Below, in pieces: positions 1,149 to 22,999 of a stretch of DNA of 64,000 nucleotides (the stretch's first letter is position 1; every line of letters begins with the position of its first letter). The position numbers and the translations under genes were made by a program. The notes under the pieces are model-generated. The model did not search any database. It worked only from the letters and a program-made list of their open reading frames with translations, and was not told the origin of the DNA. This DNA comes from Ostrea edulis (taxonomy: Eukaryota): contig NC_079172.1 in assembly GCF_947568905.1 (NCBI RefSeq), positions 15,810,001 to 15,874,000 on the forward strand, written 5' to 3'.

Positions 1149-1155
<7 letters not shown>

Positions 1156-1208
<53 letters not shown>
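1156..1208. repeat. (TA)n microsatellite (also (GA)n at 13148-13198 and (TA)n at 27219-27273)
   Basis: Direct inspection. Confidence 0.95.
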
Positions 1209-1216
<8 letters not shown>

Positions 1217-1582
1217 ATATTATAAATATACTTTTATTGTTTAAGACATACATCTTATTAATATATCAAAAAGAGGAAATACAGACAGTTAGACACACAA
1301 ATTCAGCGAATTCAAGAAAGATTTCGCCGAGGTGAAACCCAAGTGATGGACTATGCAAATACGGCATCTCATCTCATTCATTTAGACTGATGTGTTCCAT
1401 GTACATGCATTTCTTTATGTGTTTCATTATTTATCTTTTGAAACGGAATTTTACTGCCCAATTTTAATATTAAACCAAATTACCTGTGATTTGTTACAAA
1501 ACAGACTATAGGTTACCTGTAATTATTTTCCTTTGTTCTTTGACACTCTTACCTGTGCACCATTCCCGTCTAGTTAATACCA

Positions 1583-2603: not shown

Positions 2604-2813
2604 TACCATAAAACCAATCACCCGTACAGATTTAAGAATTTTAGCTATGTGGGAAGACACCGTATATGTAAATAAAAGACAGTGGGTAAGAAACAAGATA
2701 TGAAATATGCACAATGCGAGACAAAATGTACGACTGTAGCAACCTAATTAAAATTAGATCCTTTAGACTGAGCAAATAAACAGATTGGATTGAGGTTCAA
2801 AGAACATGCTTAC

Positions 2814-2942
2814 CGGTTCGGCACCGTCTTGAAAAGTATTGTGAAGATATCGTTTCAGCAAGCACGTTTTGCCGGTGTTGTTGTTTCCTAATATCACAAG
2901 TTTCATTTGAAAACCACTGTCGCGGGAATTAGCCCAATTCAT
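2814..2942 (-). CDS. Rab24-like GTPase, first coding exon, copy V4 (not in ORF track)
   Basis: Hand translation MNWANSRDSGFQMKLVILGNNNTGKTCLLKRYLHNTFQDGAEP, 129 nt, P-loop intact, phase-0 GTAAGC donor. Confidence 0.8.
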
Positions 2943-4831
2943 TATAAAGCTGTATAATGAAAAGTGTTAAAACGAAAGTCGCAACTACATTGTATAAGTA
3001 GTTATTACCTGTTCGTTATTGTTTCATTGTTTTTTTTATCAGCGCGATTTATCTATCACTGATAGGAAGTCGATATCTTCAATTTATGGCCCACTTTCAT
3101 ATTTGTTTTAATACATATTGTTTATGTAGATAACTCATCTGCTTTAGGAGATGCATGTTAATGTTTAGACCTTAGTATGACACTAAATGTGGTAGTAGTG
3201 AGGGTTCTTTATCATGCCAACGCATATAGCAGCACAGGACCTACGTTTTTAAGTAATATTTAGTTCCGCCGCTTGGCGAAGAAACAGCCACTATGCCTTA
3301 GTTTGCCTTTCATTATAGAAAAGGGATAGAGAAGTAAATTCGGACCTCCCGTTTGGGAAGCAAGACCACCCCCCCCCCCCCCCCACATCGCATGCAATAC
3401 AATGTGCATGTAATTCAATCTAAAGGTCATAATGAAATATATAAATTAAAACAGAGTTCCATTAAATTACTGAAATAGATTCTTTTTCTCAATTTTATCA
3501 ACTGAAGAAGCTTTGATGAATAGACGAATTATTCTACAGAAAGCGATTTTCTACAGAATATAAATTTTATAGTAGTCATCCAGTTTTCAACATTCATAAA
3601 ATGGAATAGTCTGCGTCTATCAAGGAAAAATGTTTTCCTGAACATTTTATCAGCATCAATATCGAGAATTCGATTTACCTTTAGTGTCACAGAAAGTTTA
3701 GTTTTTATTTCTAATAGCAAAGGAAAGTTAACTCTAATAAACCAACTGGAAAAGTTCCATAGTTACGGCACATGCATGTTGCAATCGCATACCGAGGAAT
3801 ATGAAAATTAAACAGTGTCTTGATTTTTTTTTTGATTTTTTTTTTGTGGCAAATATCATGATGTGATCTAATTGTAAACTATCTCATTAAATATACTAAT
3901 ATACTAAAATTACCGTCCAAAAGTATGTTACAATTGTAATGCATTCCAAGATGTCAAATCTATCAATCAATTTCATGAAGATATTAACATTTTTAAACCA
4001 CTATCAAACAGGTTCCGTCCGTTAAAGTTACATTATTGATTTAACCTATGCAGAAAATCTACTAAATGTACACATGAAAATCAGGAAATTGGACGTCCAC
4101 ATAAGGGTTTGGTACAAGTATGTCTTAATTTGCAAGAGAGAATTGAAAATAGAATTTCATAACAGGACTGATACCCGCGCAGGACTCATCCATATTAGTG
4201 ATATTTAGATAGACGATGGCGTATTCCTAGTATATTTATATGGTGTTGTCACTTTTTTGTGAAATACTAAACATCCGCAACCCCTTGGTTAGTGTTGTAT
4301 CATATTGTAAATAACCAACAATGCCAATCAGACATTATCCATGTTCAAAGTGCTATAGAATTTACATTTGCAGCACATTTATCAATATTTTAAGGAGACA
4401 AATACTCCAGATGTTGTGTATAAATTATCAACCCATCAAGTAGAAACGCTATGTGTCTCTAGATGAAGTATACATCGTGAAATATGCGATCTTTGCGCCG
4501 AGAATAATAAGCCCAATAAGTGGTGCTTGGAAGTTTGACATTCCAAAGTATTTCCTTCAAAACGTGATTGTAGAAAATAGTTTTCTATGCATCAGAGAGT
4601 ATAATTTACTCAGCACTGTTTCAGGATCTACTGAGAAAAATGAGCTTCGTGTCACTTAATGACTTATACCCAGATCTGATATTCGAAGAAATCGTGAAAG
4701 AATCAGCCTCCACTTTGTGGTGAAAACATCTTACAATAGATGCCTATAAGAAACGATAAAGACCAAGAGAAAGTATCCATAGAATGAACACTCGTTATAG
4801 TCATGAGAGCGATGGACTTAATAGGCGGCTG

Positions 4832-5085
4832 GAAAGCCTCCGTGGCCGAGTAGTTAGAGCTCCGCGCTCAAAATCACACGGTCTCTCACCTCTGGTCGGC
4901 GTGGGTTCGAATCCCGCTCGTGCCGGTAAGTGAGAACGTTTGCCAGTTTATTTTTGGAAGGTCGGTTGTCTCTTCCCAGGTACATTGTATCTGGGTTCTC
5001 TCTTAGACCAATAAAAAACTGGACGCCACCAGATAACTGAAAACTTGTTGAGTGTGGCGGAAAACAGCAAAACAATCAATCAATC
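4832..5085 (+). mobile_element. Full-length tRNA-derived SINE with target site duplication
   Basis: A-box TGGCCGAGTAG, B-box GGTTCGAATCC, (AATC)n tail; 11-bp direct repeat ATAGGCGGCTG at 4821-4831 and 5086-5096. Confidence 0.9.
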
Positions 5086-5799
5086 ATAGGCGGCTGTATA
5101 CAATCTCATAGGCTTCAACTATCCCAGGCAAATTGAAATAAATCATAAGTTTGTGTGCTCCCATTGTCGCAAACCACGGTTTTGAGTCCACACTCCCTCC
5201 TGATGGAGAGAATCGAATAGAAGCACCCGTGGGTAACCGACGATGGTGTGCTCCTAGAGAATTAAATTGTTGAATGCCTTGAATGATATAGCCGTTTGAT
5301 AATTCTTATAAATATTTCTATGACAACACAACATGAAGAACACAATTAGATTGTATCTTATCTGGAGTTGGAATTCCAAATAATGTTAGGTGAAACAACG
5401 GACTAAAACAATCGTGTGTGTTGTGACAAATCTATGCATGTGTGTTTGCTGTATAAACTTTTGCATAAATATGCCCAACGGTGTTTGCAAACTACATTTC
5501 ATTCCTTTTAAGTTTGTCTAAATATTACATTAAAATCTTCATAAACCCAAAAAAAAAAACCTTTCATCATGCACCTTATTCGCTTGTTTCCAACGATCGT
5601 ATCAAGATGTTTCGCCATACAGTCAGTGTTGTTTACTTATGTTACCTAGTGAACCGGAACTACCCAGTGAAATTACAAGCGGTGTCAAGGGGGGTTACTT
5701 TGTATACCGGTAGCTAACCATTACATGCCCACTCACAGTATATCGAGTAACATGAACATACGAAAAACACTGTTCTGGAAAATCCTAGTGAAGTATGCT

Positions 5800-6320
5800 A
5801 AAAATCCATATCATATATGTATGTCCTATCACCCCGAGTGGCCCCATAACAGTCCGAGGGCTGATATGTGGTCCGAGGGCTGATATGTGGTCCGAGGGCT
5901 GATATGGGGTCCGAGGGCTGATATGTGGTCCGAGGGCTGATATGGGATCCGAGGGCTGATATGTGGTCCGAGGGCTAATATGGGGTCCGAGGGCTGATAT
6001 GTGGTCCGAGGGCTAATATGGGGTCCGCGGACTGATATGTGCTCCGAGGGCTAATATGGGGTCCGCGGACTGATATGGGGTCCGAGGGCTGATATGGGGT
6101 CCGAGGGCTAATATGGGGTCCGAGGGCTGATATGTGCTCCGAGGGCTGGTATGTGGTTCGAGGGCTAATATGGGATCCGAGGGCTGATATGTGGTCCGAG
6201 GGCTGATATGGGGTCCGAGGGCTGATATATGCTCCGAGGGCTGATATTTCGTCCGAGAGCTAATATGGGGTCCGCGGACTGATATGCCATATGAAATGGA
6301 TTTCAGCGTGTAACATACTC
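5800..6320. repeat. 20-bp minisatellite (GTCCGAGGGCTGATATGTGG, about 22 units) inside a small TIR-type element
   Basis: Tandem units at about 5854-6290; flanks GTATGCTAAAAATCCATATCATAT and ATATGAAATGGATTTCAGC..CATAC are imperfect inverted repeats. Confidence 0.75.
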
Positions 6321-6542
6321 AAATATTGTATACATACAGTATAGTGTTTTAGGAGGAAATTTTATCTGATAGCTGGGGTCCGAGGGCTGGTTTTACATGA
6401 TGATATTCTATCTATCACAGGCAGGTTACTCTGTTGCATTTTAAAGGTAGATCAAGGAAGATTTGGTACATTGCCCGACTATGGTAAAAACCTTCATGCA
6501 TGAATTTACTATTTAAAAACTTTAGTACATTAAATCACTGTA

Positions 6543-6972
6543 GTCATGAAAATCTTGATACATTGATATACCATGGTAAAATCTTGATACATTGATATAC
6601 CATGGTAAAAGTCTTGATACATTGATATACCATGGTAAAAATCTTGATACATTGATATACCATGGTAAAAATCTTGATACATTGATATACCATGGCAAAA
6701 ACCTTGATACATTGATATACCATGGTAAAAATCTTGATACATTGATATACCATGGTAAAAATCTTGATACATTGATATACCATGGTAAAAACCTTGATAC
6801 ATTGATATACCATGGTAAAAACCTTGATACATTGATATATCATGGTAAAAATCTTGATACATTGATATATCATGGTAAAAACCTTGATATATTGATATAT
6901 CATGGTAAAAACCTTGATACATTGATATATCATGGTAAAAATCTGGATACATTGATATACCATGGTAAAAAC
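6543..6972. repeat. 30-bp minisatellite CATGGTAAAAATCTTGATACATTGATATAC, about 14 units
   Basis: Direct inspection; it produces three spurious repetitive ORFs. Confidence 0.95.
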
Positions 6973-7248
6973 ATTGATTGTTACTAGCGAATACCTAATT
7001 TCCAGATTGATATGCATTTTTCGCGGACAGGTAGTTGATATGGATTATTGTGACGTCATCTGTATCACAGGGTGCGGAATTGAATAAAATGTACGTAAGA
7101 AATAAAGATCAAGTTTTCGTGAATGCTGCAGGATAACCTCTGAGGTCGAGAAATGTTGTTTAAAAATCTAAATGCCGATGGAGGCGTTTCAAACAACATT
7201 TCTCAACCTGTGATGTTATCCTGCACCATCCATGAAAACATGAACTAC

Positions 7249-7530
7249 CACAGATGCCTGAAGTGTGGGAAGCTTGTATAGATCTTATGTTCATAACACC
7301 AACACCCCCCCAACCCGAATAGTATCTCACAAGTGGTCATCTCAAAAGCTTACAGAAGGTACAAACTGACTATTCAGAACGACTTCTGAGGGTGATCAGT
7401 GGGGATATAACATATTTTGGATAAATGTTTGGTTCTGTATAAAATAATTTCATTGGGATGCGGGGGGTGGGAGTGGGGTGGGGTAGGTACATAAGATCTA
7501 TACAAGATATCCACACTTCAGGTGCCTGTG
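7249..7530. mobile_element. MITE with CACAG.. TIRs and 8-bp TSD (P/hAT-like)
   Basis: CACAGATGCCTGAAGTGTGG ... CCACACTTCAGGTGCCTGTG; flanks TGAACTAC/TGAACTAG. A related fragment lies at about 35870-36016. Confidence 0.7.
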
Positions 7531-8112
7531 TGAACTAGTACAACTCAAAAATATACAGCCGATCGTTTACCTATACAGGTTCGAATTAGGTCAACGTGAC
7601 GTCATGGCAGTTTCAGAAACGGATTTGTCGTAGGCTTACATATTTTTTGTGCTGACGAAAAAGGTGAGATGGTAGGGTATACAATATTTCATGCATTTAA
7701 TTTGATGTTGACGGATTATACATCTGCTTTGAATACACAATCCAAGATAAATATACACATGAGGAAGTTGGATAATTTGTACATCACCATGTTTGTTTAC
7801 GTCAATCAACTTCGAAGTAAAAACGATCGATTTGTATTGAATTAAAATTACTCTTCCGTCATTTATAAATTTGATTTGCAACATAAATTGATTGTGTTTT
7901 TCATTAATATAAAACTGAATCATCAGTTATCGACTTTATTGTTGTATTAGCGAAACACAAACTGCACGTGAGATGTTTATCGATTTTCTCATAATCCGTT
8001 CTTACGTATGAAAGTATATCGCAGAATAATGAACAGGGCATTCTTTTGGACTTTGCAATATCCATGGTAGAATGCAATATCACAATATTTAAAATTCATA
8101 TTGTATATGTAA

Positions 8113-8885
8113 GGTGAAGATAACGAATAGTGATCAATCTCATAACTCCTATAAGCAATACAAAATAGATAGTTGGGCAAACACGGACCCCTGGACACAC
8201 CAGAGGTGGGATCAGGTGCGTAGGAGGAGTAAGCATTCCCTGTTGACCGGTCACACCCAACGTGAGTCCTATATCTTGATCAGGTAAACGGAGTTATCCG
8301 CAGTCAAAATCAGTGTGCCAAGAACGGCTTAACAATCGGTATGAAACACGTCAGACAGCATCTGACCCAATGCGAGGTTGTATTGACAAACTAGATCGTT
8401 ATAACGACCATATAATTTGCGAAATGCTGACTTCAATCGAGACGGTTGAAACCCCTGTACCATCAACTTGTTTGTCAGTAGCTTACCTCGATTCAAAAAC
8501 TGACTATACGCAGAACAAGCTCTTGCATATCGAATCAGTTGAGATATATAAACACCATATGCAGGTGATAATGGAATATTGCTACATAAATATGGAGAAG
8601 CTGAAATCATCCCGTTTGTCATACAGTTGAGTTGTCAGTTTGCCGTTAATGCCTACTTTCAATAAAATATGTAAGTATGAAGCAGAAGTGGACGACTCTG
8701 TGGTGTCCTTTATTTCGAGCTCACAGGGATATATCAAATCGACATATGAATGAAAGCTATTATTGTTAATAGACAAAACGTCATCGATATATCTAAATGT
8801 CGAATTGAAGGCCACAGCGAGAGATTTTTTCTTCTCGCGTAAAAGTTTTTGAATATGAAATATGAAATAAGCTAATTGCTGCATG
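8113..8885 (-). mobile_element. 5'-truncated Penelope-like retroelement (RT C-terminal half and 3' end), frameshifted
   Basis: FNSTFRYIDDVLSINN (RT YIDD), YDKRDDFSFSI, NIPLSPAYGVYISQLIRYARACS; shares its terminus with 24228-26090. Confidence 0.85.
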
Positions 8886-9928
8886 CAAAAAAACAACAAC
8901 AACAATAACAAAAAAACAAACAAACAAACAATCACATAAATTGAATATTTACAGGATGTATTACAAAATCGTCGTCATGTAAATAACAACTGACTAGTAT
9001 AATGTAATATTTCCATCAAATAATGAAATCCCATTAGAGCATTTCTCACTCATATTGAGACGTCTCTAGCTTCAGTGTAAGTGATTTTATGATCTACGCA
9101 TGACGCTCAAGGCCGAAGCACTGAGAGTTATTTATCGGCCAACATAAATATCAATGTGAAATAATACACTGTGTCAATGAAGTACAATATTTATATTATA
9201 GTTATGTTACATCAACATCATATAAACAAATAAACCCTGTGCATATATTTAATATCCCATGCACTACATACATGTCAGACAGTTATGTTGTTACATTTCT
9301 TCAGAGTTTTTTTCAAAAAGGAAGTCAAAATATGGGACTGGTTTTACGAGAGGCAAGATGGAGTGGATGTATCAACCAACCAACCAACCCATCCCCCACC
9401 CCCGGATGTTTATACAAGTAGCGGACATCGTTTACCAAAGAGAGAGCAGATACATATGAATAGCTTAGTGTTACGTTATTGACAAACATCCAGAGTGAAT
9501 TATCTTGAATTAAAAGAAATATGGCAAGTTTAAATTCATTGTTGGAATGAGAAATCAGAGAACAGAATTAAAAAATAGTCGAGTACATTGTTGTAGTAGA
9601 TGAAAATTTGAAATGGAAGAGGGTAATTTACTGTGAATCACAGGATGTCGTGAAGAACTACATATACAAATGTGACTATAAAACAACATGACCTATATAT
9701 ATTGAGGTTTGTGAGCAGCACTTGAAATAAATTTTCAAATAATGGTGGACAATTCTCTAAAATCAATATAGTAAATTAAGGAGAGGGTCGAAGGTTTGTA
9801 TTGAGCGAAAAATTGGTACCATCTTCCAAGATCATGAATTATTGCTAATCCTTATATGTAAGACTTTAAATACAAAAATCAACAAAAGCAGCGCATGAAG
9901 TTTGATTTACATACAATGTGGTACTTAC

Positions 9929-10048
9929 AGCCTCTGTTTTATAAAATCTGTCATGGGCGAATCTGGCCACAAGGCATGTTTTCCCAGTAAAGGCATATCC
10001 TAGCAATACTGTTTTAACAGGTAATTCACTATCATCAGATTTCCCCAT
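9929..10048 (-). CDS. Rab24-like GTPase, first coding exon, copy V3
   Basis: MGKSDDSELPVKTVLLGYAFTGKTCLVARFAHDRFYKTEA, 120 nt, P-loop intact, phase-0 GTAAGT donor. Confidence 0.8.
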
Positions 10049-13000
10049 TCACGATGATTTCATTACCCGTCTACCACACACTTAATACACACAAACTATT
10101 GAGCGAGTGAATGCTCATCAGTTAAAACATACTTAACGTGTACAGATACTATGTTTCCCTGTCGATGGCTGTGCACAAGGAAAGTAAACATGATTTTCTG
10201 AAATATGACAACAAATCCACTGATTGTAATATGTGTATGATGAAATTATTTAAGGAAATTCTTTGGGAAAAACAAAGAAAAACGGGGATAGTAAAGAATA
10301 AGGGACTGGAAAGAAGAAGTCAATGGGTCACACTGCTCCAATGATTAATCTTGCCTATACATATATCTTCCCCTGTTGTACTCTACCAGGATCATAGTAT
10401 GAGGACACCTGTGTTTACACTTTGTGTGGGATGCTCTTTGATTTGACAAACATTATTCTTGAAGTTATTGGAAGACCCTCTTTTTAAAAAAAAAAAACTA
10501 TACATTCCTATGTACAAATGTAAACTACATGAGCACACTAAGCGCATATGAATTTGACAAATTGCAAATACAGATTTTAGAAGGAATTTTTATCATAGAT
10601 TTTTTCTTATTTTATGCATCCAATTCAGATTCTGCTTTGACTTCATAGGTCACGGTTGACCTCATAGGTCACGGTTTGAATAAATCTAACTTACGTTACA
10701 GGTAGATATTTGCAAATTACTTTAACAAAATTAGGCTTGTGGTTTTCAACTGACAGCGAAAAAAATATTTTAAGATTTATTTTAATACACAATCTCCCTA
10801 AATGTGGCCCCACCCTGACCTTTGACATCATGATTTGAACAATTTGCAATACGCACCACATAAAAAAACTTGTAAAATAATTTGACAAATTTAAGCCTTG
10901 TCCTTCTTGAGAACATTTTAATACATTTTCCCCATACATTCCTATACGTAAAACGTTTCAACCCAAACTGTGGTCTGTCCTGCCCCCTGGGGTCATAGGT
11001 TGAACACCATATGAGGATACCTACATACTAATATGACAAATTGTAGAATCCCTGTTCTTGAGAAGATATTTCAAAAAATTTTCTAACATAATCTTTTAAA
11101 ATATGAAACATGAGGCCCATTGGCCGTAATGGTCACCTGGCCATCCACAACCAAACAGTAAGTCTTTCAATTGACAAAAATATCAATGTTACTTACAATG
11201 TAGTTGCACAATGTACTTTATAAAATGATAGCATGATTTAATAAAATACAGTGAGCAAATATCGTAAAAATAAAATCAGTAAAAAATGTCATTTGTTATA
11301 TCAAACTTTATTTTGTGTTAAAGACATTCATCGTGTCATCAGCGCATTACCCCATACATTTGTGTATGTGCGCCCTTCCTTATCGAAGCAGTAGATGTAT
11401 GCAAGGTGAAGATAACGAACAGTGATATGTTTCTATTCAGCTGAGCCCTATACACTCACCCACATTCAAATAGGTGACTACACCATGGCAAAACTTTAAT
11501 AGATTTCTAAACGTTTGTCCAATACATCATTTATATTAAACATTTATATCATTTACAGCTCACTCGGGTAACAAAATAAAGATCTAAAGCAATAAAATGC
11601 ACTCATCCCCTTCAAGACCAGCACTTTTTCACAAGAGGGTATAAAATCTAAAACTTTTGTAGACATATTTACGCTTTCTCTAACTATGCATTTAATTTAA
11701 ATCATACTTCAAAAACTGAACAAATTCCAGCCATCAATCATTTTAACCCCGTCCCACCTGACCCTGACCTTTTACCCTAGGAACTATGAAATGCAAAACT
11801 TGTATATAACTATATACTTTCTCTAATATATGCATTCAGTTTACATTCAATGCCCGCAAAACAAAAAACAAATTTCAACCATTGGTAATTTAAAAAAAAA
11901 ACTCCCAAAACTTCTTGTCCCTGGTCTCCTGCTCCAGGGCACTTTATTAAGTTTTTGTTTACAGATTTATCCTCTGTTTAAAAGTGAATTATCAAAAGTA
12001 TTACTTAACGACGAAGATTTTGTGACATTAATAATAGCCATTTACATTTACTGGCACTATGACCTTAACTTCTCTCCTGGCTGGAGGTCATGAACTTTAG
12101 AAATTTTGCAGACAACTTTATCGTCTTTTTAAAAATGCATTCAGTTTACATTCAATATTAACAGAACAAAAGAAAGAGAGTAATTTATACATGTACTACA
12201 TGTGTATGACGATTTTTGCCCTGCTGTAGTCTGAACCATAATCCATGAACCAAGAAATTTACAATTTTGGTGGAAGACTTCCTGCTCTTTCTGAATATGC
12301 TGTCAGTTTTTATTTGGTATTAACAGAAGAAAAGAAGAAAAGTTTTGAACATTACAGAAATTAGTCCTTTCCTGGCACGGTAAATATCAAAATCATAAAA
12401 AGTCAGGAAAACGTCGGATATTTCGGACTATACAGACATTAACATTATATACCAATTTGGTCCCCACCCTAGAATCCAAACTCCTGACCGGGGGGGGGGG
12501 GGGGAGGGGTCATGAAATTCACAACCTTGATAGAGGATTTCCTAATCATTCAGTTTTCCTTTCAGATGTGAGAATAGTCAAAGTTTGGCAATATTGTCCC
12601 GTCCGTGGGTCCCTAGAGTGCAAAAGTAATAAAATGTATAATTTGGGTTCATCTTGTCATGTTAGTTACCAAATATAATGATTTTTAAATTATCAAAAAG
12701 AATTTGAATACGTGTATTTGTTTTGTTCAATGGCAGCTGAAATGCAAGTTCTGCTTTTCTAGACCTGACAGAGAAGTTTAAAATGTGTAAAGTTAACAAC
12801 GATATACTTTAATTCGTACATCTACCGGAAACCTAATTACATGCAAATGTCTTCTGAACAATACAATTGTTGATCATATTGTACATTAAAGCTAGTACAT
12901 TGTTACCCGATTGAACATCAACGGAAAAATCTCGAGTGTTTAACAAAATCATTGGAGGAAGTTTATAAATATTCAGGCAAACACACTCACTAACACACAC

Positions 13001-13143
13001 TCACTACAACACGTTTTGTTTGAATAGAATTGTGTTCATAGCTCACATGATTTGGATTACAGTTGTATATGTACCTTCGATTTTATTATTGATTTTCTAC
13101 TATTACAATAATATAAGTTAACTGTTCTAATTCAAGGGCAGGT

Positions 13144-13201
<58 letters not shown>

Positions 13202-13564
13202 AAGATTCTACAACAGAAAAGTTAAAAAGACAGATTTGCTAATGGGATTGTGTGTGTATTTGTGTATACTATATAACTATTTTCGTGTCAACTTAACATT
13301 GGGCGATTCTTCAGGTGGATGAAAAATGTTTGAGGTGAAATGATTTCCTCATTGGTAAACAATGATATACCTATTATGTACGTATACAAGTACAGGTGAA
13401 ATACATATATTGAATTTATATTTACTGTATTAAAACCTGGACTGTGTGTGTGTGTGTGTGTGGGGGGGGGGGGGTTGTAACACGATTGTTTCTGTTCTAC
13501 CCCTTACATGCATAGCTCCTGTTTTCCTATAAGTTGTACCTCATGTAATTAGATTTCCTAAAGA

Positions 13565-13880
13565 AAAGATAGCGATTGCGGTAACCTAGTCGTAGAGTGC
13601 TAATTTTACGAACGGTCGGAGGTCCAGGGTCACGTCAAATTAAGACATTAAAATAAGTAGCTACTGTTTCTCTATCAAGCGTCCGACGTTGTAAGCGAAA
13701 GTTTCGGGTGTTTTGGACACTAGTAAATCTAGAGGTCCTGTGTAACGGTAAGCGTTAGCACGATTCTAACGGAACCCTCAACAGTGTGGCTTTGCGAGCC
13801 ATGCATACGTCATGCATTGTCACATCCATCATCTGGTGACGCTTTTCTATGGGTAAAAAATTCTCAAATGGGGTGTAATT
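13565..13880 (+). mobile_element. Degenerate tRNA-SINE related to the 59879-60215 family
   Basis: Decayed tRNA-like head, GAGGTCCTGTGTAACGGTA..GCACG core, GGTGACG..TATGGGTAAAAAATTCTC 3' end. Confidence 0.5.
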
Positions 13881-13889
13881 ACAAAAAAG

Positions 13890-13922
<33 letters not shown>

Positions 13923-14341
13923 TCACCTTGGCCCATATCTGAAGACTTTCCATATATATTTGCATGTAAAACCTTAGTCCCTATTATGGCCCAAACTACC
14001 CTTTGCAAACTTGAATCTACACTATATCAAAAAGCTTTCATGTAAATGACAACTTCTTAGGCCCAATGGTTCTTAAGAAGAAGATTTTTAAAGCTTTTTC
14101 CTATATTTGTATGTAAAACTTTGACACACCCCCCCCGCACTTGTGGCCCCATCCTACCCTCCGGGGGCCATGATTTGAACAAACTTGAATCTGCAATATG
14201 TCCCAGTGGTTCTTGAGAAGAAGATTTTTAAATGACCCCACCCTATTTTTGCATTTTTGTGATTATCTCCCCTTTGAAAGGGACATGGCCCTTCATTTGA
14301 ACAAACTTGAAAGCCCTTCACCCAAGGATGCTTTTGGCCAT

Positions 14342-14379
<38 letters not shown>

Positions 14380-14445
14380 TCGAAAATGTGAAAAGTTTAA
14401 CAGACAGACGGACAGACAGACAGACGGACAGACGACGGACAAAAA

Positions 14446-14490
<45 letters not shown>
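13890..14490 (+). mobile_element. HINE/Helentron-type non-autonomous element with satellite-like core
   Basis: 5' CAAGAGGCCCATGGGCCACATCGCTCACCTGAG; 3' GACA microsatellite, AAAGCTCACTTGAGCTTT hairpin and inverted subTIR CTCAGGTGAGCT. Partial copies at about 10380-11150 and 17330-17700. Confidence 0.8.
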
Positions 14491-14492
<2 letters not shown>

Positions 14493-14669
14493 TCTAAGGA
14501 AATAATAAGAAACGAAAGAAAATAGTAAACCTTCAACTTGCATGTTTCTTCAAATCAAATTTCTCTATTTTATTTCGATAAGAGATAAAATTCAAATTCT
14601 ATCGGTACACCCTGTATAATAATGAACAGAATGTTTACAGAAACATTCTCACTACGTATTACTACTTAC

Positions 14670-14792
14670 ACTTTCACTCTTTTCTGCAAACTGGCCACAT
14701 GCATACCTAGTTACGAGACAAGTTTTCCCTGCGTCGCACCTCCCCAATGTCACGACTTTGAAAGAGCAAGATAGTGTTCCCGATGAAGCCAT
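14670..14792 (-). CDS. Rab24-like GTPase, first coding exon, copy V2 (not in ORF track)
   Basis: Hand translation MASSGTLSCSFKVVTLGRCDAGKTCLVTRYACGQFAEKSES, 123 nt, GxxxxGKT P-loop, phase-0 GTAAGT donor. Confidence 0.8.
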
Positions 14793-16240
14793 TGCTGCAG
14801 TCTCATTAAACATTACAATGTTAATTTTGGCAACTTATCTTTTATTTCCTATCAAATTTCCTTGGTTACATGGCTCGAAGGACTGAAATCAAGGAAATTA
14901 TTTGTATCGGTTGTTCTTCCGTTTTCAACTCGGAATGAAGCCGTACCACAACACAAGTACATAGCAGATGTTCGAATGAAATTAAAATTAAAATGCTTTA
15001 TTTCAACGAGTATATGTTTTTTTCCCCAGTATTTATTAAAGAAAGTGTAATCATTAATGAAATAGATATCGAAACTTTTTTAAACCGGCCGACTTCCGGA
15101 ATGAATGAAAGAGCTGGATTAGAGGGGTGACCGTTTGACCGAAAACTTTGCATTTAGTTACATTTTGTCTCAATTATCATTAGAATTCTTCGTATCACGT
15201 ACCATTTTAAAATACAATGCACAAGTGTCATTATAAATAAAATAAATGACTAACATGTTTACTGTTTTATTTTTAGCACTGGAATTAAATAAACACAAAC
15301 ATTTTCATAATAAATAAACAGGCATGTACCGGATGGAAACACTTCATAAAAAATAGCACTGCATTTTGTGCGGGGTAAAGTCTCGTGCTAGCAAGATCAA
15401 ATGGTCAAATTTCACCTTTAAGAACAAATGAAACATATTGCAGGAAATAATTTCCTCTTTCAATTGAAGTCTTAATTTTTACAGATTATATTTTATTGAA
15501 TAACACGTGATCGGAATAGTTTTTGTTATCTTTTTAAGTTTTGCTTTTTCAACCAAAAAAAGAAAAAAAGACACTTCCATCATAAGATCATTGATTTACT
15601 ACAAATGAACATCTTGCATGTCAATGTGTCCCCATGTCATCATTTTGTGAATCAACATAATTTCATAGCATTATCAATTTTTAGTGTTATTTTTAAATCA
15701 AATCACTGCACTTTCGATACTCAGTTGTTAAATCAATTATTAATGGACAAAATTATACCACTTAATTTTGGTTTTATCTACATGCATAACTGGACCCCCA
15801 ACGGAAATAATCCCTTATGGCTTTTGGAGGCTTTCCAACATGGAGTGTGTTTTCAACTTACATGTAACTATTCTACATGCATGTACATACTAGAAAAAGA
15901 GATATTTCCAAGTATAGTAATCACGATTAAGTGATTTCTTAAATTTTACAGTGATTCAGTTTCTGTGATACTCTTAACCATGATTGTAAAGATGTCGTTT
16001 ACCAATTGAATGTGCTTCTTATCTGATTAACATAAATTAATAAAAACGTTGGTGTAATCGATACACAAGGTATTGTTCACTTTAATCCCGGCGATCTGAA
16101 ATTGTCGTGTGGTATAATTATAGGCGGAAATCAAATTAAATCGGCTTAATTACATGCAATACCAGAGGTAATTGACACGAGAGAACCCGTCTTCCTGATG
16201 TAATTATCAAAGATAATAGAAAACATGAAGAAAACACAAA

Positions 16241-16455
16241 GAGGTGTCCGGGAAGCGCAGAGGTACCGCTCTCGTTTCTCACCGCTGAAATCCCGAGTTC
16301 GATCTCCGTGATTAGCAGTGGTTAATTGTATGCAAGAGGGTATGGTGGTCCCCCGTTCGAACACGTGGGTTTGCTTCGGGTACTCCGGTTTCCTCCCACA
16401 TAAATGGCCCCCTAGCGCCAACAACCATGCGTCTACCCATTGGAAATAAGCTTTA
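16241..16455 (+). mobile_element. tRNA-derived SINE with V-domain-like core
   Basis: tRNA-like head (GAGTTCGATCTCC B-box-like) plus GTGGGTTTGCTTCGGGTACTCCGGTTTCCTCCCACA, which resembles the V-SINE core. Confidence 0.7.
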
Positions 16456-18661
16456 CGTATATTTGTATGTGTAGATGTATATACCGAATAAAGTTTCTTT
16501 TTCTTCTTTTTTTTTTTACCTATATACTCTTGATCATATCCACTGCCTATGCATTGAACAAATTTCAAAAGAAATCTATATACAAAATATGAAAATTCTA
16601 GTATTCTTTTTTTTAATAGTTCAGGAAATATTGAATACGTCAGATTTTAATGAAAAGTAGGTCAAACTTCCAAGTCAAGACCAAACACCAAGATATAACA
16701 AGAACTAGCCATTAAGAATCTACATATATACAAAATATGAAAGCTCTGCCTTTAATAGTTGAAGAGATAATGATTACACTGAAAGTCCGGTCTTTTAAAA
16801 AGTAGGTCAAGGTTACAATAACAAACACGATTGTAACAAGGTCTTGTCTAGCTGCAGAACTGTAGCTCTCTGAGAAAACATTGAGAGAGATCAGAGAGCT
16901 ACAGATCCATCCCTTATAAAAACCTTCGATTTACGACACACAAAAAGCTACGCACGGTCGAGGCCTCATATCGTTGTATTCTTATGTTGCCGTCTCGTTT
17001 TAATATCAAAAAATTTCTAACATATTTTCCTACTATGCTTGTGTCCAAACATACCTTCAAATATTTATTAAAGGTTTTTATAAGGGGTGGATCTGTAACT
17101 CTCTGATCTGTCCCAATATTTTCTCAGAAAGCTACATATGAAAAAAATATCGTAAATAGTTCAGGACATCCATGTATAAAATACTTCAGATTTTTATTAA
17201 AAGTGGGTCAAACTTCCAGATCAAGGTCACAAAATTACACAAGTCTTGTCGTAAAGAATGTATATACAAACTATGAAAGCCCTATCTTAAATAGTTCAAG
17301 AGATATTTTTAAAGATTTTTTTTCTATATAACAGCATGTAAAAATTGTTTCCCCTATTGTGGCCACACACTACCCCCAGGGACCATGATTTGAATAAACT
17401 GGAATTTTCTCTATAATAGGAAGCTTTCATGTAAATTTCAACTTTTTTACCCAGTGGTTTTTGAGAAGAAGATTTTCCCTATATATTTCCATGTAAAACT
17501 GATACCTATTGTGGCTCAACTCTACCCCCGGAGGCCATGATTTATCAAACTTGAATCTACATTTATTTATGACAAGAAGCTTTCATGTAAATTTCCACTT
17601 TTTTGGTCCAGTGGTTCTTGCGATGACTTTTTAAATGACTCTACCTTGAGAAGAAGATTTTAAAGATTTTCCCTATATATTCGCATTTAAAACTTTGATT
17701 CCCAATTGTCGTTGTAGATACACATTGGCATTGAAGAGTTACCCCCCTGAAAGTCGCTCTTTATCTACAATGATAAGGATTCCCAAATGATTTGGACAAA
17801 TTTGCAGTGGCGCCCCCCCCCCCCTAAAATTTTCAAATTTAAGGTAAATCGCGGTATCTTGCTTCGGAAAATGTACTAAACGATTAAAGAAGCAATAATT
17901 TCTTCCACTCTCGGAGAAATAAATGACAAAATCTTTTGATTTCTTGAATTACTTTATTGGGAGAACTTAATTTTTTCCAAAAAAAAAACACCTTAAAATG
18001 TGGGTCATTTTATTAATTTCATCTTATTAAAATGATAGAAAATAGTACAAATGACTAAATAGGAGAAATATTTCAAGCCCCATAAAATCTGTAAAATCCA
18101 GGAGCTTCGTCCTGGACCCACTGCCTCATAAAGTGGCGCCCCCCCCCCCCCCCCCCCGTAACCACAATTCCTGGATCCGCCCCTGATTTGTATTGAGGGT
18201 TCATATATTAACTGGAAAGATCTTACCAAATGTGCAACAAAAATCAATAAGAAGTATTTTTTTCCATGCCAGTCTTGCTTATCCTTTAAAGTTTGTTTTC
18301 CTCTTCCAGTTTGTGAACAATATCAGAACATTATGGTTGGTAAGCGTACATATGTAAGTCAAAATCTCCAGGATCTGACCTGGATTTCTCGAAGCAATCT
18401 TAAGTCGAAACTCGGACTTAAGTCGGAGATTTTACTCAAATCCTGACTGTTTAAATAAAAGTAAACTCAAATTTAAGTTTGAGATTTTTTCGAGAAATTC
18501 AAGCTCGCGTGGTTGTCTTGAACTGTAGCTCTCTGATGGGTGGGGGGTAGGATAGACCAGAAAGATACAGATCTACACACTGAAATAAAATCAACAACTA
18601 CAAAAAAACTCCCGATTTACAATGCACCTTCCTCCGAAAAAGATAGAGAATTAACACAAAA

Positions 18662-19097
18662 GGACTAGTGTGAAACTAGTGTGTAAAGCTATCCGTAATG
18701 AACAAACAGGCACTAGTGTTAAACTAGTGTGTAAAGCTATCCGTAATGTACAACCAGGTACTAGTGTGAAACTAGTGTGTAAAGCTATCTGTAATGAACA
18801 CCAGGTACTAGTGTGAAACTAGTGTGTAAAGTTATCCGCAATGAACAAACAGGTACTAGTGTGAAACTAGTGTGTAAAGCTATCTGTAATGAACAAACAG
18901 GTACTAGTGTGAAACTAGTGTGTAAAGCTATCCGTAATGAACAAACAGGTACTAGTGTAAAACTAGTGTGTAAAGCTATCCGTAATGTACAACCAGGTAC
19001 TAGTCTGAAACTAGTGTGTAAAGCTATCCGTAATTAACAACCAGGTACTTGTGTGAAACTAGTGTGTAAAGCTATCCGTAATGAACAACCAGGCACT
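18662..19097. repeat. ~49-bp minisatellite ACTAGTGTGAAACTAGTGTGTAAAGCTATCCGTAATGAACAAACAGGT, about 9 units
   Basis: Direct inspection; explains ORF 18813-19037. Confidence 0.95.
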
Positions 19098-20385
19098 TGG
19101 ATCGAAAGGAAATTGTTTAACTAAAGATTGAATTTAGCTAGTGGCTAAAACGAACAAACCCCAATACCTAAATACAACTAGACACACACAACACATATCT
19201 CTACAAAAGAAAAGCCTGAGACCCATGGTTAAAGTCGGCATGGCTCTATCATGTCTATAGGGGTAGCTCTGAAGATAAACACGTGTACTCTAATTTGATC
19301 AACTTTGTTTCTTTCTTCTTAACAATTTTACTTACAAATAGTGAAAGGGATTGGGCAGTAGCCATAGCCTATTTTAGCACTCCCCTGTGAAATGAACTTG
19401 ATTGAATTCATTTTGTACGGTAAAAAGTTCGTATGGTTTGCAGCAAGTGTCTTTAACTGAACATTTAACTCATATTACTTAGGAAAGGATAAGGTAGTTG
19501 ATATGTCTCTTCCTATACTCATTGACAAGGTTTAGTTGACGGATGAGGCCAAAACATCATAAAGTCTACGTTCCTTCTCACCTGAACAAATACCTAACAA
19601 TTGATTAGAATCTATTGTGCAAATAAATGAAACGCTGTGAAAACAAATTTACCATGCATATAATATTAGTGCAACATATATGTACACCACGTGCTTACAT
19701 TCATGATCGTAATAATTCTGTGTCGTTTCATGAAAGAAGATATCGACATTGTATCATATTCATGTTGTTATACATTTTGTACAGTGCAAATAAAACGATG
19801 CGACCATTGGTTAGACTCGCGCAGTCCTAGGACGTGTATAATGCGCGTGGATAGCTGGTAAACTCGTTCATTACGTGCCTTACATGTAAGATTATGTGTT
19901 ATTTCGCAGTAAGTTTAATACACTCCCATCCTCCGTAAATCCCCACCCTCCACATTATAGTAAATATACTGAATATCAAATGCTATTCGTGTGCACTGCA
20001 AATGTTGAATTATAGTGAGGAGGGCCCAAATTAACACCACCTGTAATACACTGTAATTAGTCGAACCTTGGTGATATGTACGCCAGGTGCTCGGCTTTAA
20101 TAAGGACCCTCTCCACACTTTATACAAATGGGTTTTTTTTCCAGAAATTAAGAAAATTATATCGTATATAAATATGTAGTTCTTGCGATTATCTGGACTT
20201 TTTCAGCAGGGGGTATATCTCATTCTGTCCCAGGAAAAATCTCCAAAGACGATCGAAGAAGTGATGATCAGAGATTTGAAATGGCAAAGATACATTCCGT
20301 AACTTTATCTTGGTCTCATATACAATGATGCATAATGATGAAACCACTTCATTTGATTACAAATTGTGTATAACATTGTAATATT

Positions 20386-20470
20386 GTATAACATTGTAAT
20401 ATTGTATAACATTGTAATATTGTATAACATTGTAATATTGTATAACATTGTAATATTGTATAACATTGTA
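20386..20470. repeat. 18-bp tandem repeat (ATTGTATAACATTGTAAT)n
   Basis: Direct inspection, about 5 units. Confidence 0.9.
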
Positions 20471-21407
20471 AATTTAATTTCAGTTTATTGTATTGTACAC
20501 AAAAGTGTATATTGCTCTAACTGCAGAACAGTACATGCAACATGAACTTTGAACTCTCCCTAAACATATGGCCTAGTCTCATTTTCACATTAACCTCTAG
20601 CTGGTGTTAATTTTCTATGAATGAAATATTCTTGAGTACACCAAATAAGCCAAGTTTGTCACAGTACAATATATTACAATGAGACAGATTGCTATTAAAC
20701 ATCACTAACTGGTTACCATCCCCTATTGGGTGTAGACGTGTGCTAATAGAATACACATAATAATATTAAACAATTTCAACAAATTACCATTACTTATTCC
20801 ATTAAAATAAAGTAGAAGTAATATTGTAATTATGAAAACAAGACCACTTTTAATCTAATTATGGGAAGAAATTTGCCTGGACTTGAAATATTTTGATTAC
20901 TTTTGATCACATTTAAATATAATTACTTTATATATAAAAAAGAAAAGTTTAAAAAAAAAAACTTTTTTACAATTACAACATTATTGTTTTACAACATACA
21001 GTGAACATTTTTTCATTGGTAGCTTTCCTGAGAAGGATATTCCTATTAAATGAATTTGCAGGAAATACTAAGAAGTAAAACCTTTTTGTTACACAGATTT
21101 CTTGTATCATTTGTACATAATTTATGTATGCTATAGATCTATGGTGAACAGAAGTCCCAATCTTTTGACATTTATTTGTCAACATCAACTGTATCAATTA
21201 CACTGTGAATTAACCTAGTATACATAATACTAAGTTGCTTGATATATTAGCTTTGGCCCACTGAGCACTCAGTGATTGTTATTTCACATGTACACGACTG
21301 CAGTGCAGTGGACAAATGCATCCTATAAACTTCATCTAATGACATTTTGAAGTCGAAAAACTGATCTCCATCTAAAGATATCATACATGTGTCTATAGTG
21401 TAAGTAG

Positions 21408-21580
21408 AGAAAATTATCCCTTTCCTCAACTGTACTTTACAACCAGTGGTCAGTTTAAACATCTGTAAGGGAGTGGTATGATTGGATCATATTAAAAGGG
21501 AGCGGAGTGATTGGATCATACAGACATTTAAAAATGACCATTGGTTGTGAAATACAACTGAGGAAAGGGATAATTTTCTC
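21408..21580. mobile_element. Palindromic MITE-like element
   Basis: AGAAAATTATCCCTTTCCTCAACTGTA..ACAACCAGTGGTCA..TCTGTA is mirrored by TACAGA..TGACCATTGGTTGT..ACAACTGAGGAAAGGGATAATTTTCT. Confidence 0.7.
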
Positions 21581-22194
21581 CAATAGAAGTATTTGACACA
21601 AGTATTCGTATTCTACTTTCGAAATGAGATGAGGGTTTTTTTTTTATCAATTTTAAAATGTTATTAGATCTACATGGTCATGATGGTGATGGAAAAACTT
21701 GAATGTTCAGCAGGCCTTGGTTAATGTCGACAGTTTACATTAATAAATTGGTGAAATCTTCTAATTTATTCAAATTTTTCAACTGGATAGGTGTAAGTAA
21801 TAAATTTACAACATGTTTGGACCGATTAGATAAGTACTGGACCAGTACCTACACAGTTATGCTTAAAAGCTGAGGAGCTATAACTTCTTTCTAATTATAA
21901 GAATACAAGCTGAAAGCTACATAGTGCAGTGTTAAATGCCTCTGTTGAATCTTATTTCTATTGCTGAAATTGGGTAGCCTATAATAAACGTTACAAACCT
22001 TCCTCTATTATACACATCAAGGCTACCCAGACTGTGAACGTGCATCAACTTGAATGGTCGGTCTTCATATTAGATTTCATGAAAGCATTATAAAATTATG
22101 TTGTACACACCAGTATGGTACTAAATAACCATACGAATGTACATCTATTGAGCACACACACGATAAGAAAGAAAACAGAAAAGTGTCTACTTAC

Positions 22195-22323
22195 GTTTTG
22201 ATAATTGCTGGTAAATCTTTCGTGGACATATCTAGAGACGAGGCATGTTTTCCCAACGTAAGCTTTTCCTAACAGAACGATTTTGATCTGTAGCTGTCCA
22301 TTTTTATTGCCACTGGATGCCAT
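22195..22323 (-). CDS. RAB24: Rab24-like GTPase, first coding exon, copy V1 (closest to canonical Rab24)
   Basis: MASSGNKNGQLQIKIVLLGKAYVGKTCLVSRYVHERFTSNYQN, 129 nt, then a GTAAGT donor (phase 0). Resembles Rab24 [25 protein letters not shown]...YQN, ending just before TIGAAF. Confidence 0.85.
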
Positions 22324-22999
22324 TACATTACAACTATTATACTAAGTCACTTAATGATCTGTCATTACAGATTTTTACTGTTTTTGGAAAACCGAAAGTA
22401 AGATAACGACGCTAAAAAAGAAACTAAATTGCTCAGACACATAATTTCCGAATTCGCACACATGACTTCTTTTTTTTTTAAATCAGTGAATAGATCCCCC
22501 AAAACGGTGTTTTTCACTAGATTGTTTACATCAAAGCCGTAATCTTTTGAACAACTTGTAACCTACTGTTGAAATGCACTATAAGTTCTTATCGTTCTAG
22601 AAACCAATATTCTCTTTAGAGAAGTCGAGAGACATACCCTTCGTTGTATGATGATGAAGGCTATGCCTCTCGACTTCTCTAATATAAAGAGAATAGAAAC
22701 CAAGGGTGGCATATTTCTGCCATCATACATAATTTGTATTTAATCAAGTAATGTTTTAGTTTAAACAATATTTATTTGTAAATAATTCGATAATGTATAC
22801 AAACAAAGTCTTATACATGAAATAGATTGAGAAACAAGCCAAAAGGTTTTGATTTTTCAAATAATAAAAAAAAAAACTTAAAAGGGCAACCGTAAAAATG
22901 CTTTCATGTTCATAGTGTGTCATCCACTTAACTACGGAAAGCACAGGGGTCTGTCACGAAATATTTGCAACGAGGCCCCTGTGCGGAAAGTAGCAAGTA

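What the first reader, a model, noticed from the sequence alone, without database searches (positions are those of the whole stretch)
2814..22323. Array of four alternative P-loop first exons for a Rab24-like GTPase: possible protocadherin/UGT1-style variable-exon locus
Seen: four co-oriented ATG-started exons of 120-129 nt over 20 kb (22195-22323, 14670-14792, 9929-10048, 2814-2942). All are open, all carry GxxxxGKTCL, and all end in a phase-0 GTAAG donor at the homologous codon just before Rab24's TIGAAF. A manual scan for TIG/TVG, WDTAG, YYR and GAKAA codons between them found no exon 2+. Established: clustered protocadherin and UGT1A loci splice one of many promoter-bearing first exons to shared constant exons. 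Inference: one Rab core left of the window receives interchangeable N-terminal modules. I know of no such arrangement for a Rab. Intact frames and donors despite strong divergence argue for selection rather than debris.
Basis: partly seen in the sequence, partly recalled or inferred. Interest (0 to 1): 0.92.

Follow-up and report, generated by a model that had tools for sequence, protein, structure and literature searches.

The report
Oyster Rab24 gene with interchangeable first exons
A flat-oyster Rab24-type GTPase gene carries four alternative first coding exons, each encoding its own version of the nucleotide-binding loop and joined to one shared gene body; oysters have kept this layout across three genera, and I found no paper describing it for a Rab.

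Summary
Four minus-strand exons (A 22195-22323, B 14670-14792, C 9929-10048, D 2814-2942) each start at ATG and encode strand beta1, the P-loop, helix alpha1 and the first part of switch I. Each ends at a phase-0 GTAAG donor. tblastn with the gene's own product finds no later Rab exon anywhere in the 64 kb.

The window is Ostrea edulis. RefSeq 'Rab-24-like isoform X1' is exon A plus a core, and 'isoform X2' is exon D plus the identical core. Crassostrea virginica, Saccostrea cucullata and S. echinata have the same ordered array (A-E-B-(F)-C-D, five or six exons), followed by one set of six constant exons. Three RNA-derived contigs from a Crassostrea species carry A-, C- or D-type exons. They are 98.6-99.6% identical from the exon 1/2 junction onward and have unrelated 5' UTRs.

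In the one unsaturated comparison, every exon class has dN/dS of 0.20 or less.

Not shown: use of B and C in O. edulis itself, and the transcription start sites. The isoforms sit unremarked in automatic annotation, and I found no paper on them. I file this as a new member of the multiple-variable-first-exon kind (UGT1A/protocadherin type). Here the swapped piece is part of a GTPase active site.

The parts
22195..22323 (-). Variable first coding exon A. It is the ancestral-like type and keeps the Rab24 'YQN' residues before switch I. It forms the N-terminus of O. edulis Rab-24-like isoform X1.
   Evidence: It is 100% identical to residues 1-43 of P0165. Of the four exons it is the most similar to mussel and mammalian Rab24 exon 1 (28/43 and 24/43 residues).
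22389..22399 (-). Conserved element ACTTTCGGTTT, 66-76 nt upstream of the exon A ATG. Its reverse complement GAAACCGAAAGT resembles an IRF-E/ISRE site. It lies inside the 5' UTR of the A-type transcript.
   Evidence: It is present upstream of A in O. edulis, C. virginica, S. cucullata and the Crassostrea transcript L001. It is one of only 4 matches to AAANNGAAAGT in the window.
14670..14792 (-). Variable first coding exon B.
   Evidence: Its orthologue is the N-terminus of S. echinata isoform X3 (P0169). The B clade has 99/100 support. dN/dS is 0.03 between the two Saccostrea species.
14844..14897 (-). Conserved upstream blocks of exon B, TTTCCTTGATTT and AACCAAGGAAATTTGATAGGAAAT. These are candidate promoter elements.
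   Evidence: They are nearly identical in O. edulis and both Saccostrea species, although synonymous sites between these genera are strongly diverged to saturated.
9929..10048 (-). Variable first coding exon C.
   Evidence: C-type exons form the N-termini of C. virginica isoform X2 (P0172) and of the Crassostrea transcript L003/P0175.
10192..10206 (-). Conserved block ATATTTCAGAAAATC, about 150 nt upstream of the exon C ATG. It aligns with the 5' end of the C-type transcript's 158-nt UTR.
2814..2942 (-). Variable first coding exon D, the copy nearest the constant exons. It forms the N-terminus of O. edulis isoform X2.
   Evidence: Its translation equals residues 1-43 of P0167. The D clade has 86/99 support.
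2969..2979 (-). Conserved element ACTTTCGTTTT, 27-37 nt upstream of the exon D ATG. It is the same motif family as the one upstream of A.
   Evidence: It is present upstream of D in O. edulis, S. cucullata and S. echinata.
1..2813 (-). The start of the intron between exon D and constant exon 2. The six constant exons lie beyond the left edge of the window.
   Evidence: This stretch has no match to the core of P0165. The intron from D to exon 2 is 3.6-6.8 kb in the three other oysters.

Best explanation
This is the 5' part of the single Rab24-type gene of Ostrea edulis, built as a multiple-variable-first-exon locus. Four tandemly duplicated first coding exons (A, B, C, D) lie over 20 kb. Each has its own ATG and 5' UTR, and probably its own promoter. 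Transcription starts at one of them. That exon's strong 5' splice site is joined to the acceptor of the first of six constant exons, which lie just left of the window. Any variable exons further downstream are removed as part of the long first intron. The result is four Rab24 isoforms, or five to six in Crassostrea and Saccostrea. They share the switch I threonine, switch II, the guanine-specificity motifs and the C-terminal tail. They differ in the N-terminal tail, strand beta1, the four free P-loop residues, helix alpha1 and the first half of switch I. Those are the regions that in Rabs influence nucleotide handling and partner specificity. Shown here: the exon array, the absence of intervening gene bodies, the shared core in annotated products and RNA contigs, conservation across three oyster genera, and purifying selection in the one unsaturated comparison. 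Inferred: independent promoters, regulated choice among exons, and functional differences between isoforms.
For: The exon anatomy is. No exon 2 or later is in the window. O. edulis RefSeq isoforms X1 (A + core) and X2 (D + identical core) are. Orthologous loci with conserved order and a single core are L004 C. virginica (A-E-B-C-D), L005 S. cucullata (A-E-B-F-C-D) and L006 S. echinata (A-E-B-C-D). Exact spliced mapping gives six constant exons of 69, 147, 100, 51, 78 and 83-89 nt. RNA-derived Logan contigs L001 (A-type), L002 (D-type) and L003 (C-type) come from three sequencing runs. They are 98.6-99.6% identical from exactly the exon 1/2 junction onward and unrelated before it. The 5' UTRs of 55, 24 and 158 nt differ from each other. 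The A-type UTR is colinear with genomic DNA: it reappears in the unspliced genomic ORFs P0159 and P0161 and aligns to C. virginica upstream of A. The C-type UTR aligns colinearly with the Saccostrea sequence upstream of C. Each exon class has its own conserved upstream block. Selection: between S. cucullata and S. echinata, dN/dS is 0 for A, 0.03 for B, 0.17 for C, 0.20 for D and 0.18 for E, against 0.07 for the core. All 20 genomic copies in the four species keep ATG, open frame, GK[ST] and the donor. Exon classes B, D and E form cross-genus clades. The AlphaFold model of X1 places exon 1 at beta1 (residues 11-19), the P-loop, alpha1 (25-34) and the first part of the switch I loop.
Against: I could not retrieve the sequence left of the window. 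Look-ups for the O. edulis products returned nothing, so the constant exons of this genome were not seen directly. No product using B or C is on record for O. edulis. A search with a B-type N-terminus found only the S. echinata model. No transcription start site is mapped, and contig ends are not cap sites. O. edulis exon D has a good acceptor-like site 7 nt before its ATG and exon B has a CAG 2 nt before its ATG, although neither is conserved in other oysters. Between genera dS is saturated, so selection estimates rest mainly on one species pair and on exons of about 40 codons. RefSeq isoforms are automatic models.
Confidence: 0.85

Rival explanations
1. The four exons are mutually exclusive internal exons, as in Dscam or other MXE clusters. 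All transcripts would start at one shared non-coding leader exon upstream of A, and splicing control rather than promoter choice would pick one cassette.
For: O. edulis exon D has a pyrimidine-rich CAG acceptor-like site 7 nt upstream of its ATG, and exon B has a CAG 2 nt upstream. The 5' ends of the RNA contigs are not mapped cap sites.
Against: The A-, C- and D-type RNA contigs share no 5' sequence. All 55 nt of the A-type UTR are colinear with genomic DNA. The 158-nt C-type UTR aligns with the region directly upstream of exon C in Saccostrea and matches nothing in the 10 kb upstream of A in C. virginica. The acceptor-like sites are not conserved in other oysters. Splicing A's donor to the D site would hit a stop codon after six codons (read directly from the sequence).
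Confidence: 0.1
2. Only the ancestral-like exon A makes a functional protein. Exons B, C and D would be duplicated exon relics that are occasionally transcribed and picked up by annotation pipelines, with no function of their own.
For: A is the slowest-evolving exon and the one closest to Rab24 of other animals. In O. edulis only A and D appear in annotated products. B-type products appear in a single automatic model. C and D diverge quickly between genera, at 42-50% amino-acid identity between O. edulis and C. virginica.
Against: All copies in four species from three genera keep ATG, frame, GK[ST], the aromatic residue corresponding to Ras Phe28, and a consensus donor. This holds although synonymous sites are strongly diverged to saturated between genera (dS about 0.6 to beyond the range the method can estimate). 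dN/dS is 0.03-0.20 in the unsaturated Saccostrea pair. Exon order is conserved, and so are upstream non-coding blocks. The C- and D-type mRNA contigs carry full-length ORFs, and their protein clusters hold 14 and 4 member sequences.
Confidence: 0.04
3. The exons belong to ordinary tandem paralogous Rab24-like genes whose later exons were missed.
For: None after testing. This was my leading prior before any search.
Against: tblastn with the locus's own product finds nothing but the four first exons in 64 kb. The three other oyster loci have exactly one set of constant exons after the array.
Confidence: 0.01

Closest known systems
UGT1A, clustered protocadherin and GCNT2 loci (multiple variable first exons spliced to shared constant exons; reviewed in PMC1885805 and PMC3325998)
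   Same: A tandem, co-oriented array of homologous first exons lies upstream of one set of constant exons. Each mRNA carries exactly one variable exon. The variable exons have their own ATG and 5' UTR. Exon number varies between lineages through gain and loss.
   Different: The array is small, at 4-6 exons. Each variable exon encodes only 40-43 residues. That is a fragment of a single compact G domain (beta1, P-loop, alpha1, early switch I), not a whole ligand-binding or adhesion domain. Promoters are inferred, not mapped. A shared upstream motif exists only for the A and D classes. There is no evidence for stochastic choice of the kind protocadherins show.
Tandem-duplicated mutually exclusive exons that swap a homologous sub-domain piece (PMC9741552, PMC5740500). 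By my own recollection, untested here, the Rab6A/Rab6A' pair also arises from a duplicated internal exon.
   Same: Isoforms are identical except for a homologous cassette produced by tandem exon duplication. The cassette tunes a functional surface of one fold.
   Different: Here the cassettes are first coding exons with distinct 5' UTRs, so the choice is most likely made at transcription initiation rather than by splicing control. The cassettes are also far more divergent from each other, at 32-43% identity to exon A.
[quoted passage not shown] 2000)
   Same: The spliced oyster products have WDTAGSE in place of WDTAGQE, TKxD in place of NKxD, and 55-60% identity to vertebrate Rab24. Exon A keeps the 'YQN' residues before switch I.
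   Different: Among the 120 best-scoring relatives, which include many vertebrate and non-oyster mollusc Rab24 proteins, no pair outside the oysters combines the same core with a different N-terminus. The oyster C-terminus ends in C-x-x-C-F-K-R rather than CCHH. Exons B-F replace the position equivalent to dog Q38, whose Q38P change is associated with hereditary ataxia (PMC3916225).

Membership tests
Rab24 subfamily of Rab GTPases | Ras-superfamily G1 motif G-x4-G-K-[ST] at the start of a Ras/Rab domain | tested here: met
   All four exons carry it. Pfam Ras and Roc match profile positions 1-29. PDB Rab N-termini match at E of about 1e-8.
Rab24 subfamily of Rab GTPases | Switch II motif WDTAGSE, with Ser in place of the catalytic Gln | tested here: met
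   It is present in the spliced O. edulis products P0165 and P0167 and in vertebrate Rab24. The residue is encoded outside the window.
Rab24 subfamily of Rab GTPases | G4 motif TKxD instead of NKxD | tested here: met
   P0165 has GTKKDL and vertebrate Rab24 has TKSDL.
Rab24 subfamily of Rab GTPases | The nearest named relatives are Rab24 | tested here: met
   In one search every named non-oyster hit is Rab24 or Rab24-like, at 47-61% identity. No second oyster Rab24 appears among the 120 best hits.
Rab24 subfamily of Rab GTPases | Unusual C-terminal cysteine motif (CCHH in tetrapods) and poor prenylation and GTPase activity | tested here: inconclusive
   The oyster tail ends in C-x-x-C-F-K-R, which has two Cys but in a different layout. 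The biochemistry cannot be tested with these tools.
Multiple-variable-first-exon loci (UGT1A / clustered protocadherin type) | Tandem co-oriented homologous variable exons upstream of a single set of constant exons | tested here: met
   The window holds the array and no core. The complete layout is seen in L004, L005 and L006. For O. edulis the core is inferred from P0165 and P0167.
Multiple-variable-first-exon loci (UGT1A / clustered protocadherin type) | Each mature mRNA joins exactly one variable exon to the first constant exon | tested here: met
   RNA contigs L001-L003 switch from unrelated to 98.6-99.6% identical sequence exactly at the exon 1/2 junction. RefSeq isoform sets in five oyster species show the same pattern.
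Multiple-variable-first-exon loci (UGT1A / clustered protocadherin type) | Each variable exon has its own promoter and transcription start | tested here: inconclusive
   The 5' UTRs are distinct and colinear with the genome, and each class has its own conserved upstream block. No CAGE or RACE data are available.
Multiple-variable-first-exon loci (UGT1A / clustered protocadherin type) | Variable exons lack functional 3' splice sites, so downstream copies are skipped | tested here: inconclusive
   Acceptor-like sites upstream of O. edulis B and D exist but are not conserved. Function cannot be judged from sequence alone.
Mutually exclusive internal exon clusters | The alternative exons are internal and flanked by shared upstream and downstream exons | tested here: not met
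   The A-, C- and D-type transcripts share no sequence upstream of the cassette, and the A and C UTRs are colinear with the genome. A far-upstream leader exon is not strictly excluded.
Tandem paralogous genes | Each copy is followed by its own complete exon set | tested here: not met

The most novel reading that the evidence does not exclude
Oysters would have turned their single Rab24 gene into a promoter-selected cassette system. Each promoter would install a different P-loop, alpha1 and early switch I module on one Rab core, giving isoforms with different nucleotide-state behaviour or partner specificity. The A and D promoters would be driven by IRF-type factors through the conserved element whose reverse complement reads GAAACCGAAAGT. 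That would link isoform choice to antiviral or autophagy responses. This would be the first case of a small GTPase whose active-site half is chosen at transcription initiation.
Probability: 0.2. Interest if true: 0.75.

Novelty: new member of a known kind. Interest (0 to 1): 0.55.

Why it matters
Rab identity is normally fixed gene by gene, and new specificities arise by whole-gene duplication. Here one gene body is reused with four to six different N-terminal halves of the nucleotide-binding site, and oysters of three genera have kept the arrangement under purifying selection. The swapped segment holds the free P-loop residues, including the positions equivalent to Ras G12 and G13. It also holds helix alpha1 and the early switch I residues, including the position whose Q38P change is associated with ataxia in dogs. 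The isoforms are therefore natural chimeras for asking which Rab24 properties reside in this segment. Rab24 is linked to autophagy, and the mechanism of the vertebrate protein is still unclear. Oysters are studied for antiviral and stress responses, so condition-specific isoform switching is directly testable with existing RNA-seq data. The finding also shows that biologically interesting gene architectures sit unremarked in automatic isoform annotation.

Tried and rejected
1. Tandem paralogues was my leading prior. Searches rejected it.

2. I tried to extend the sequence left of the window through exact look-ups of the exon D ORF and of both O. edulis isoforms. Nothing was on record, so the O. 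edulis constant exons were not seen.

3. The one profile search of the representative library returned mostly unspliced ORF fragments that read through the donor. It was useful only because P0002 could then act as a length carrier for the region search that found the full-length isoforms.

4. I searched for B-type products in other species or runs and found only the S. echinata model.

5. I searched the O. edulis window for remnants of exon types E and F and found none.

6. I looked for one promoter element shared by all variable exons, analogous to the protocadherin conserved sequence element. Only classes A and D share ACTTTCG[GT]TTT; B, C and E have other conserved blocks.

7. dN/dS between genera is uninformative because dS is saturated.

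8. The exon tree does not resolve classes A and C because it has only 43 columns. Their orthology rests on conserved order.

9. Literature searches for Rab24 in oysters or Crassostrea, and for variable first exons in GTPases, found no description.


Full report
**Observation.**
- Each begins with ATG and is open for 40-43 codons.
- Each contains G-x4-G-K-T-C-L and ends in phase 0 at GTAAGT (A, B, C) or GTAAGC (D).
- The peptides are 32-43% identical to A. Eleven columns are invariant, and they include the P-loop Gly/Lys/Thr and the aromatic residue corresponding to Ras Phe28.
- Pfam Ras and Roc match only the first 29 profile positions. A profile of the four peptides hits Rab N-termini in the PDB at E of about 1e-8.

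**No later exons in the window.** Three searches agree.
- A six-frame regex scan finds no G3 motif and no credible G4 motif.
- tblastn with 12 full-length Rab24-like proteins finds only the four first exons.
- tblastn with the locus's own 218-residue product does the same. Its constant exons would match at 100% identity and could not have been missed.

**Identity of the locus.** A profile search of the representative library returned mainly unspliced ORFs that run from exon 1 into the intron. One of them, P0002, was long enough to act as a carrier for a region-restricted search. That search found full-length proteins.
- P0165, named by NCBI 'ras-related protein Rab-24-like isoform X1 [Ostrea edulis]', begins with the exact translation of exon A and continues with TIGAAF.
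- A search with P0165 returned O. edulis 'isoform X2' (P0167). Its first 43 residues are the exact translation of exon D, and its remaining 175 residues are identical to X1.
- The same search returned isoform sets for Saccostrea cucullata (X2, X3, X5), S. echinata (X2, X3), Crassostrea virginica (X1, X2) and C. gigas (X1). It also returned three unnamed Logan proteins. Within each species the cores are the same and only the first 39-44 residues differ.
- Among the 120 best relatives, which include many molluscs and vertebrates, pairs with the same core and a different N-terminus occur only in oysters.

**Transcript evidence.** Logan contigs L001, L002 and L003 come from three different sequencing runs of a Crassostrea species in or near the gigas group. 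They carry complete ORFs with A-, D- and C-type first exons.
- They are 98.6-99.6% identical to each other from exactly the exon 1/2 junction to their ends, and unrelated upstream of it.
- Their 5' UTRs of 55, 24 and 158 nt share nothing.
- The A-type UTR is colinear with genomic DNA. It reappears in the unspliced genomic ORFs P0159 and P0161 and aligns to C. virginica directly upstream of exon A.
- The C-type UTR aligns colinearly, though weakly, with the sequence upstream of exon C in Saccostrea.

**Comparative genomics.** I fetched the loci of C. virginica (L004), S. cucullata (L005) and S. echinata (L006).

| Species | Order of variable exons | What follows the array |
|---|---|---|
| O. 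edulis (window) | A-B-C-D | core lies left of the window |
| C. virginica | A-E-B-C-D | one set of six constant exons |
| S. cucullata | A-E-B-F-C-D | one set of six constant exons |
| S. echinata | A-E-B-C-D | one set of six constant exons |

- Exact spliced mapping gives constant exons of 69, 147, 100, 51, 78 and 83-89 nt.
- The intron from D to exon 2 is 3.6-6.8 kb, more than the 2.8 kb left in our window. This explains why the core is not seen here.
- O. edulis has no E or F remnant.
- All 20 genomic exon copies keep ATG, frame, GK[ST] and a donor at the homologous codon.
- On a tree of the peptides, classes B (99/100), D (86/99) and E (87/85) form cross-genus clades. A and C are unresolved with 43 columns, but their position in the array is conserved.
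- A is the closest to mussel, scallop and mammalian Rab24, so it is probably the ancestral exon.

**Selection.** Between genera, synonymous sites are strongly diverged to saturated. The two Saccostrea species give usable values.

| Segment | dN/dS, S. cucullata vs S. echinata |
|---|---|
| A | 0 |
| B | 0.03 |
| C | 0.17 |
| D | 0.20 |
| E | 0.18 |
| Core | 0.07 |

The exons are short, so these values are rough. Together with the intact state of every copy, they argue against debris. C, D and E evolve several times faster at the protein level than A, B and the core.

**Regulatory hints.** Each class has its own conserved block upstream of the ATG.
- A and D share ACTTTCG[GT]TTT on the sense strand, 35-76 nt before the ATG. 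It is present for A in three genomes plus the transcript, and for D in three genomes.
- In the 64-kb window only four matches to the corresponding pattern exist, and two of them are these.
- The reverse complement, GAAACCGAAAGT, fits the IRF-E/ISRE consensus as I recall it. Oysters have IRFs that act on ISRE reporters (PMC8218723, PMC6685332; abstracts only). This link is a hypothesis, not a finding.
- Acceptor-like sites precede O. edulis B and D but are not conserved.

**Protein level.** An AlphaFold model of X1 built on a 45-sequence alignment has mean pLDDT 81.7. It places exon 1 on the disordered tail, beta1 (residues 11-19), the P-loop, alpha1 (25-34) and the first part of the switch I loop. 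Exon 2 starts at the switch I threonine.
- The four free P-loop residues differ completely between exons: KAYV (A), RCDA (B), YAFT (C) and NNNT (D).
- The 'YQN' before switch I is kept only in A. Its Gln corresponds to dog Rab24 Q38, where Q38P is associated with hereditary ataxia (PMC3916225; position checked on a canid Rab24).
- The shared core has WDTAGSE and TKxD, the Rab24 hallmarks. [quoted passage not shown]

**Mechanism.**
- Shown: the array, the single core in sister genera, one variable exon per mRNA, and conservation.
- Inferred: each exon is transcribed from its own promoter, the cap-proximal donor is joined to exon 2, and downstream variable exons are removed with the intron.
- Also inferred: the isoforms differ in nucleotide handling or partner choice.
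- The main rival is mutually exclusive splicing behind a shared leader exon. The distinct, genome-colinear UTRs disfavour it, but only mapping of transcription start sites can exclude it.

**Comparison and novelty.** In architecture this is a member of the multiple-variable-first-exon kind (UGT1A, clustered protocadherins, GCNT2; PMC1885805). It differs in that the variable unit is a sub-domain cassette of a GTPase active site. In that respect it resembles tandem-duplicated mutually exclusive exons (PMC9741552). Searches for Rab24 in oysters and for variable first exons in GTPases found nothing. The isoforms do exist in automatic RefSeq annotation. Another note (s1-279173) reports two interchangeable first exons in Rab8 of this genome. 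I did not test it.

**Verdict.** The finding is of moderate to high interest. It is a clean, conserved and testable case, but it is lineage-restricted, its function is unknown, and it is already implicit in databases.

Noticed in passing
window 2969-2979 and 22389-22399 (minus strand); L004, L005, L006 upstream of exons A and D: The element ACTTTCG[GT]TTT is conserved across genera, 35-76 nt upstream of the ATG of exon classes A and D. Its reverse complement resembles an IRF-E/ISRE site. Two of the only four matches in the window are these.
   Followed up: partly
L004:24001-25251 (minus strand): In C. virginica a called gene with ligand-gated ion channel domains (Neur_chan_LBD and Neur_chan_memb, 416 aa) lies on the opposite strand. 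It sits inside the intron between variable exon D and constant exon 2.
   Followed up: no
L004:28495: In C. virginica, constant exon 4 (the fifth coding exon of the mRNA) uses a GC donor (AAG|GCACGT). Both Saccostrea species have GT at this position.
   Followed up: no
P0173 versus P0174 (C. gigas X1 versus Logan contig L002): Their cores are more than 97% identical over the first 120 residues, but their D-type first exons are only 71% identical. This could mean two D-like exons in the gigas group or very fast evolution of D.
   Followed up: no
L004, L005, L006 gene ranges: The recorded gene ranges run 0.36-0.68 kb beyond the stop codon I mapped. In S. echinata the range starts at exon B rather than exon A. 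This hints at an alternative 3' exon and at incomplete annotation of exons A and E.
   Followed up: no
window 5776-6381, 6488-7038, 18601-19135, 20344-20487: Tandem arrays with periods of 19, 30, 48 and 18 nt lie inside the introns between the variable exons.
   Followed up: no
window 8313-8935 (minus strand): ORFs here carry a reverse-transcriptase-like YIDD segment, probably a retroelement fragment, in the intron between exons C and D.
   Followed up: no
window 419-784 and 4854-5075: These are two copies of a repeat whose ORFs share a ...FFIG.RENPDTMYLGRD.RPS..KLANVLT... segment. It is probably a dispersed oyster repeat.
   Followed up: no
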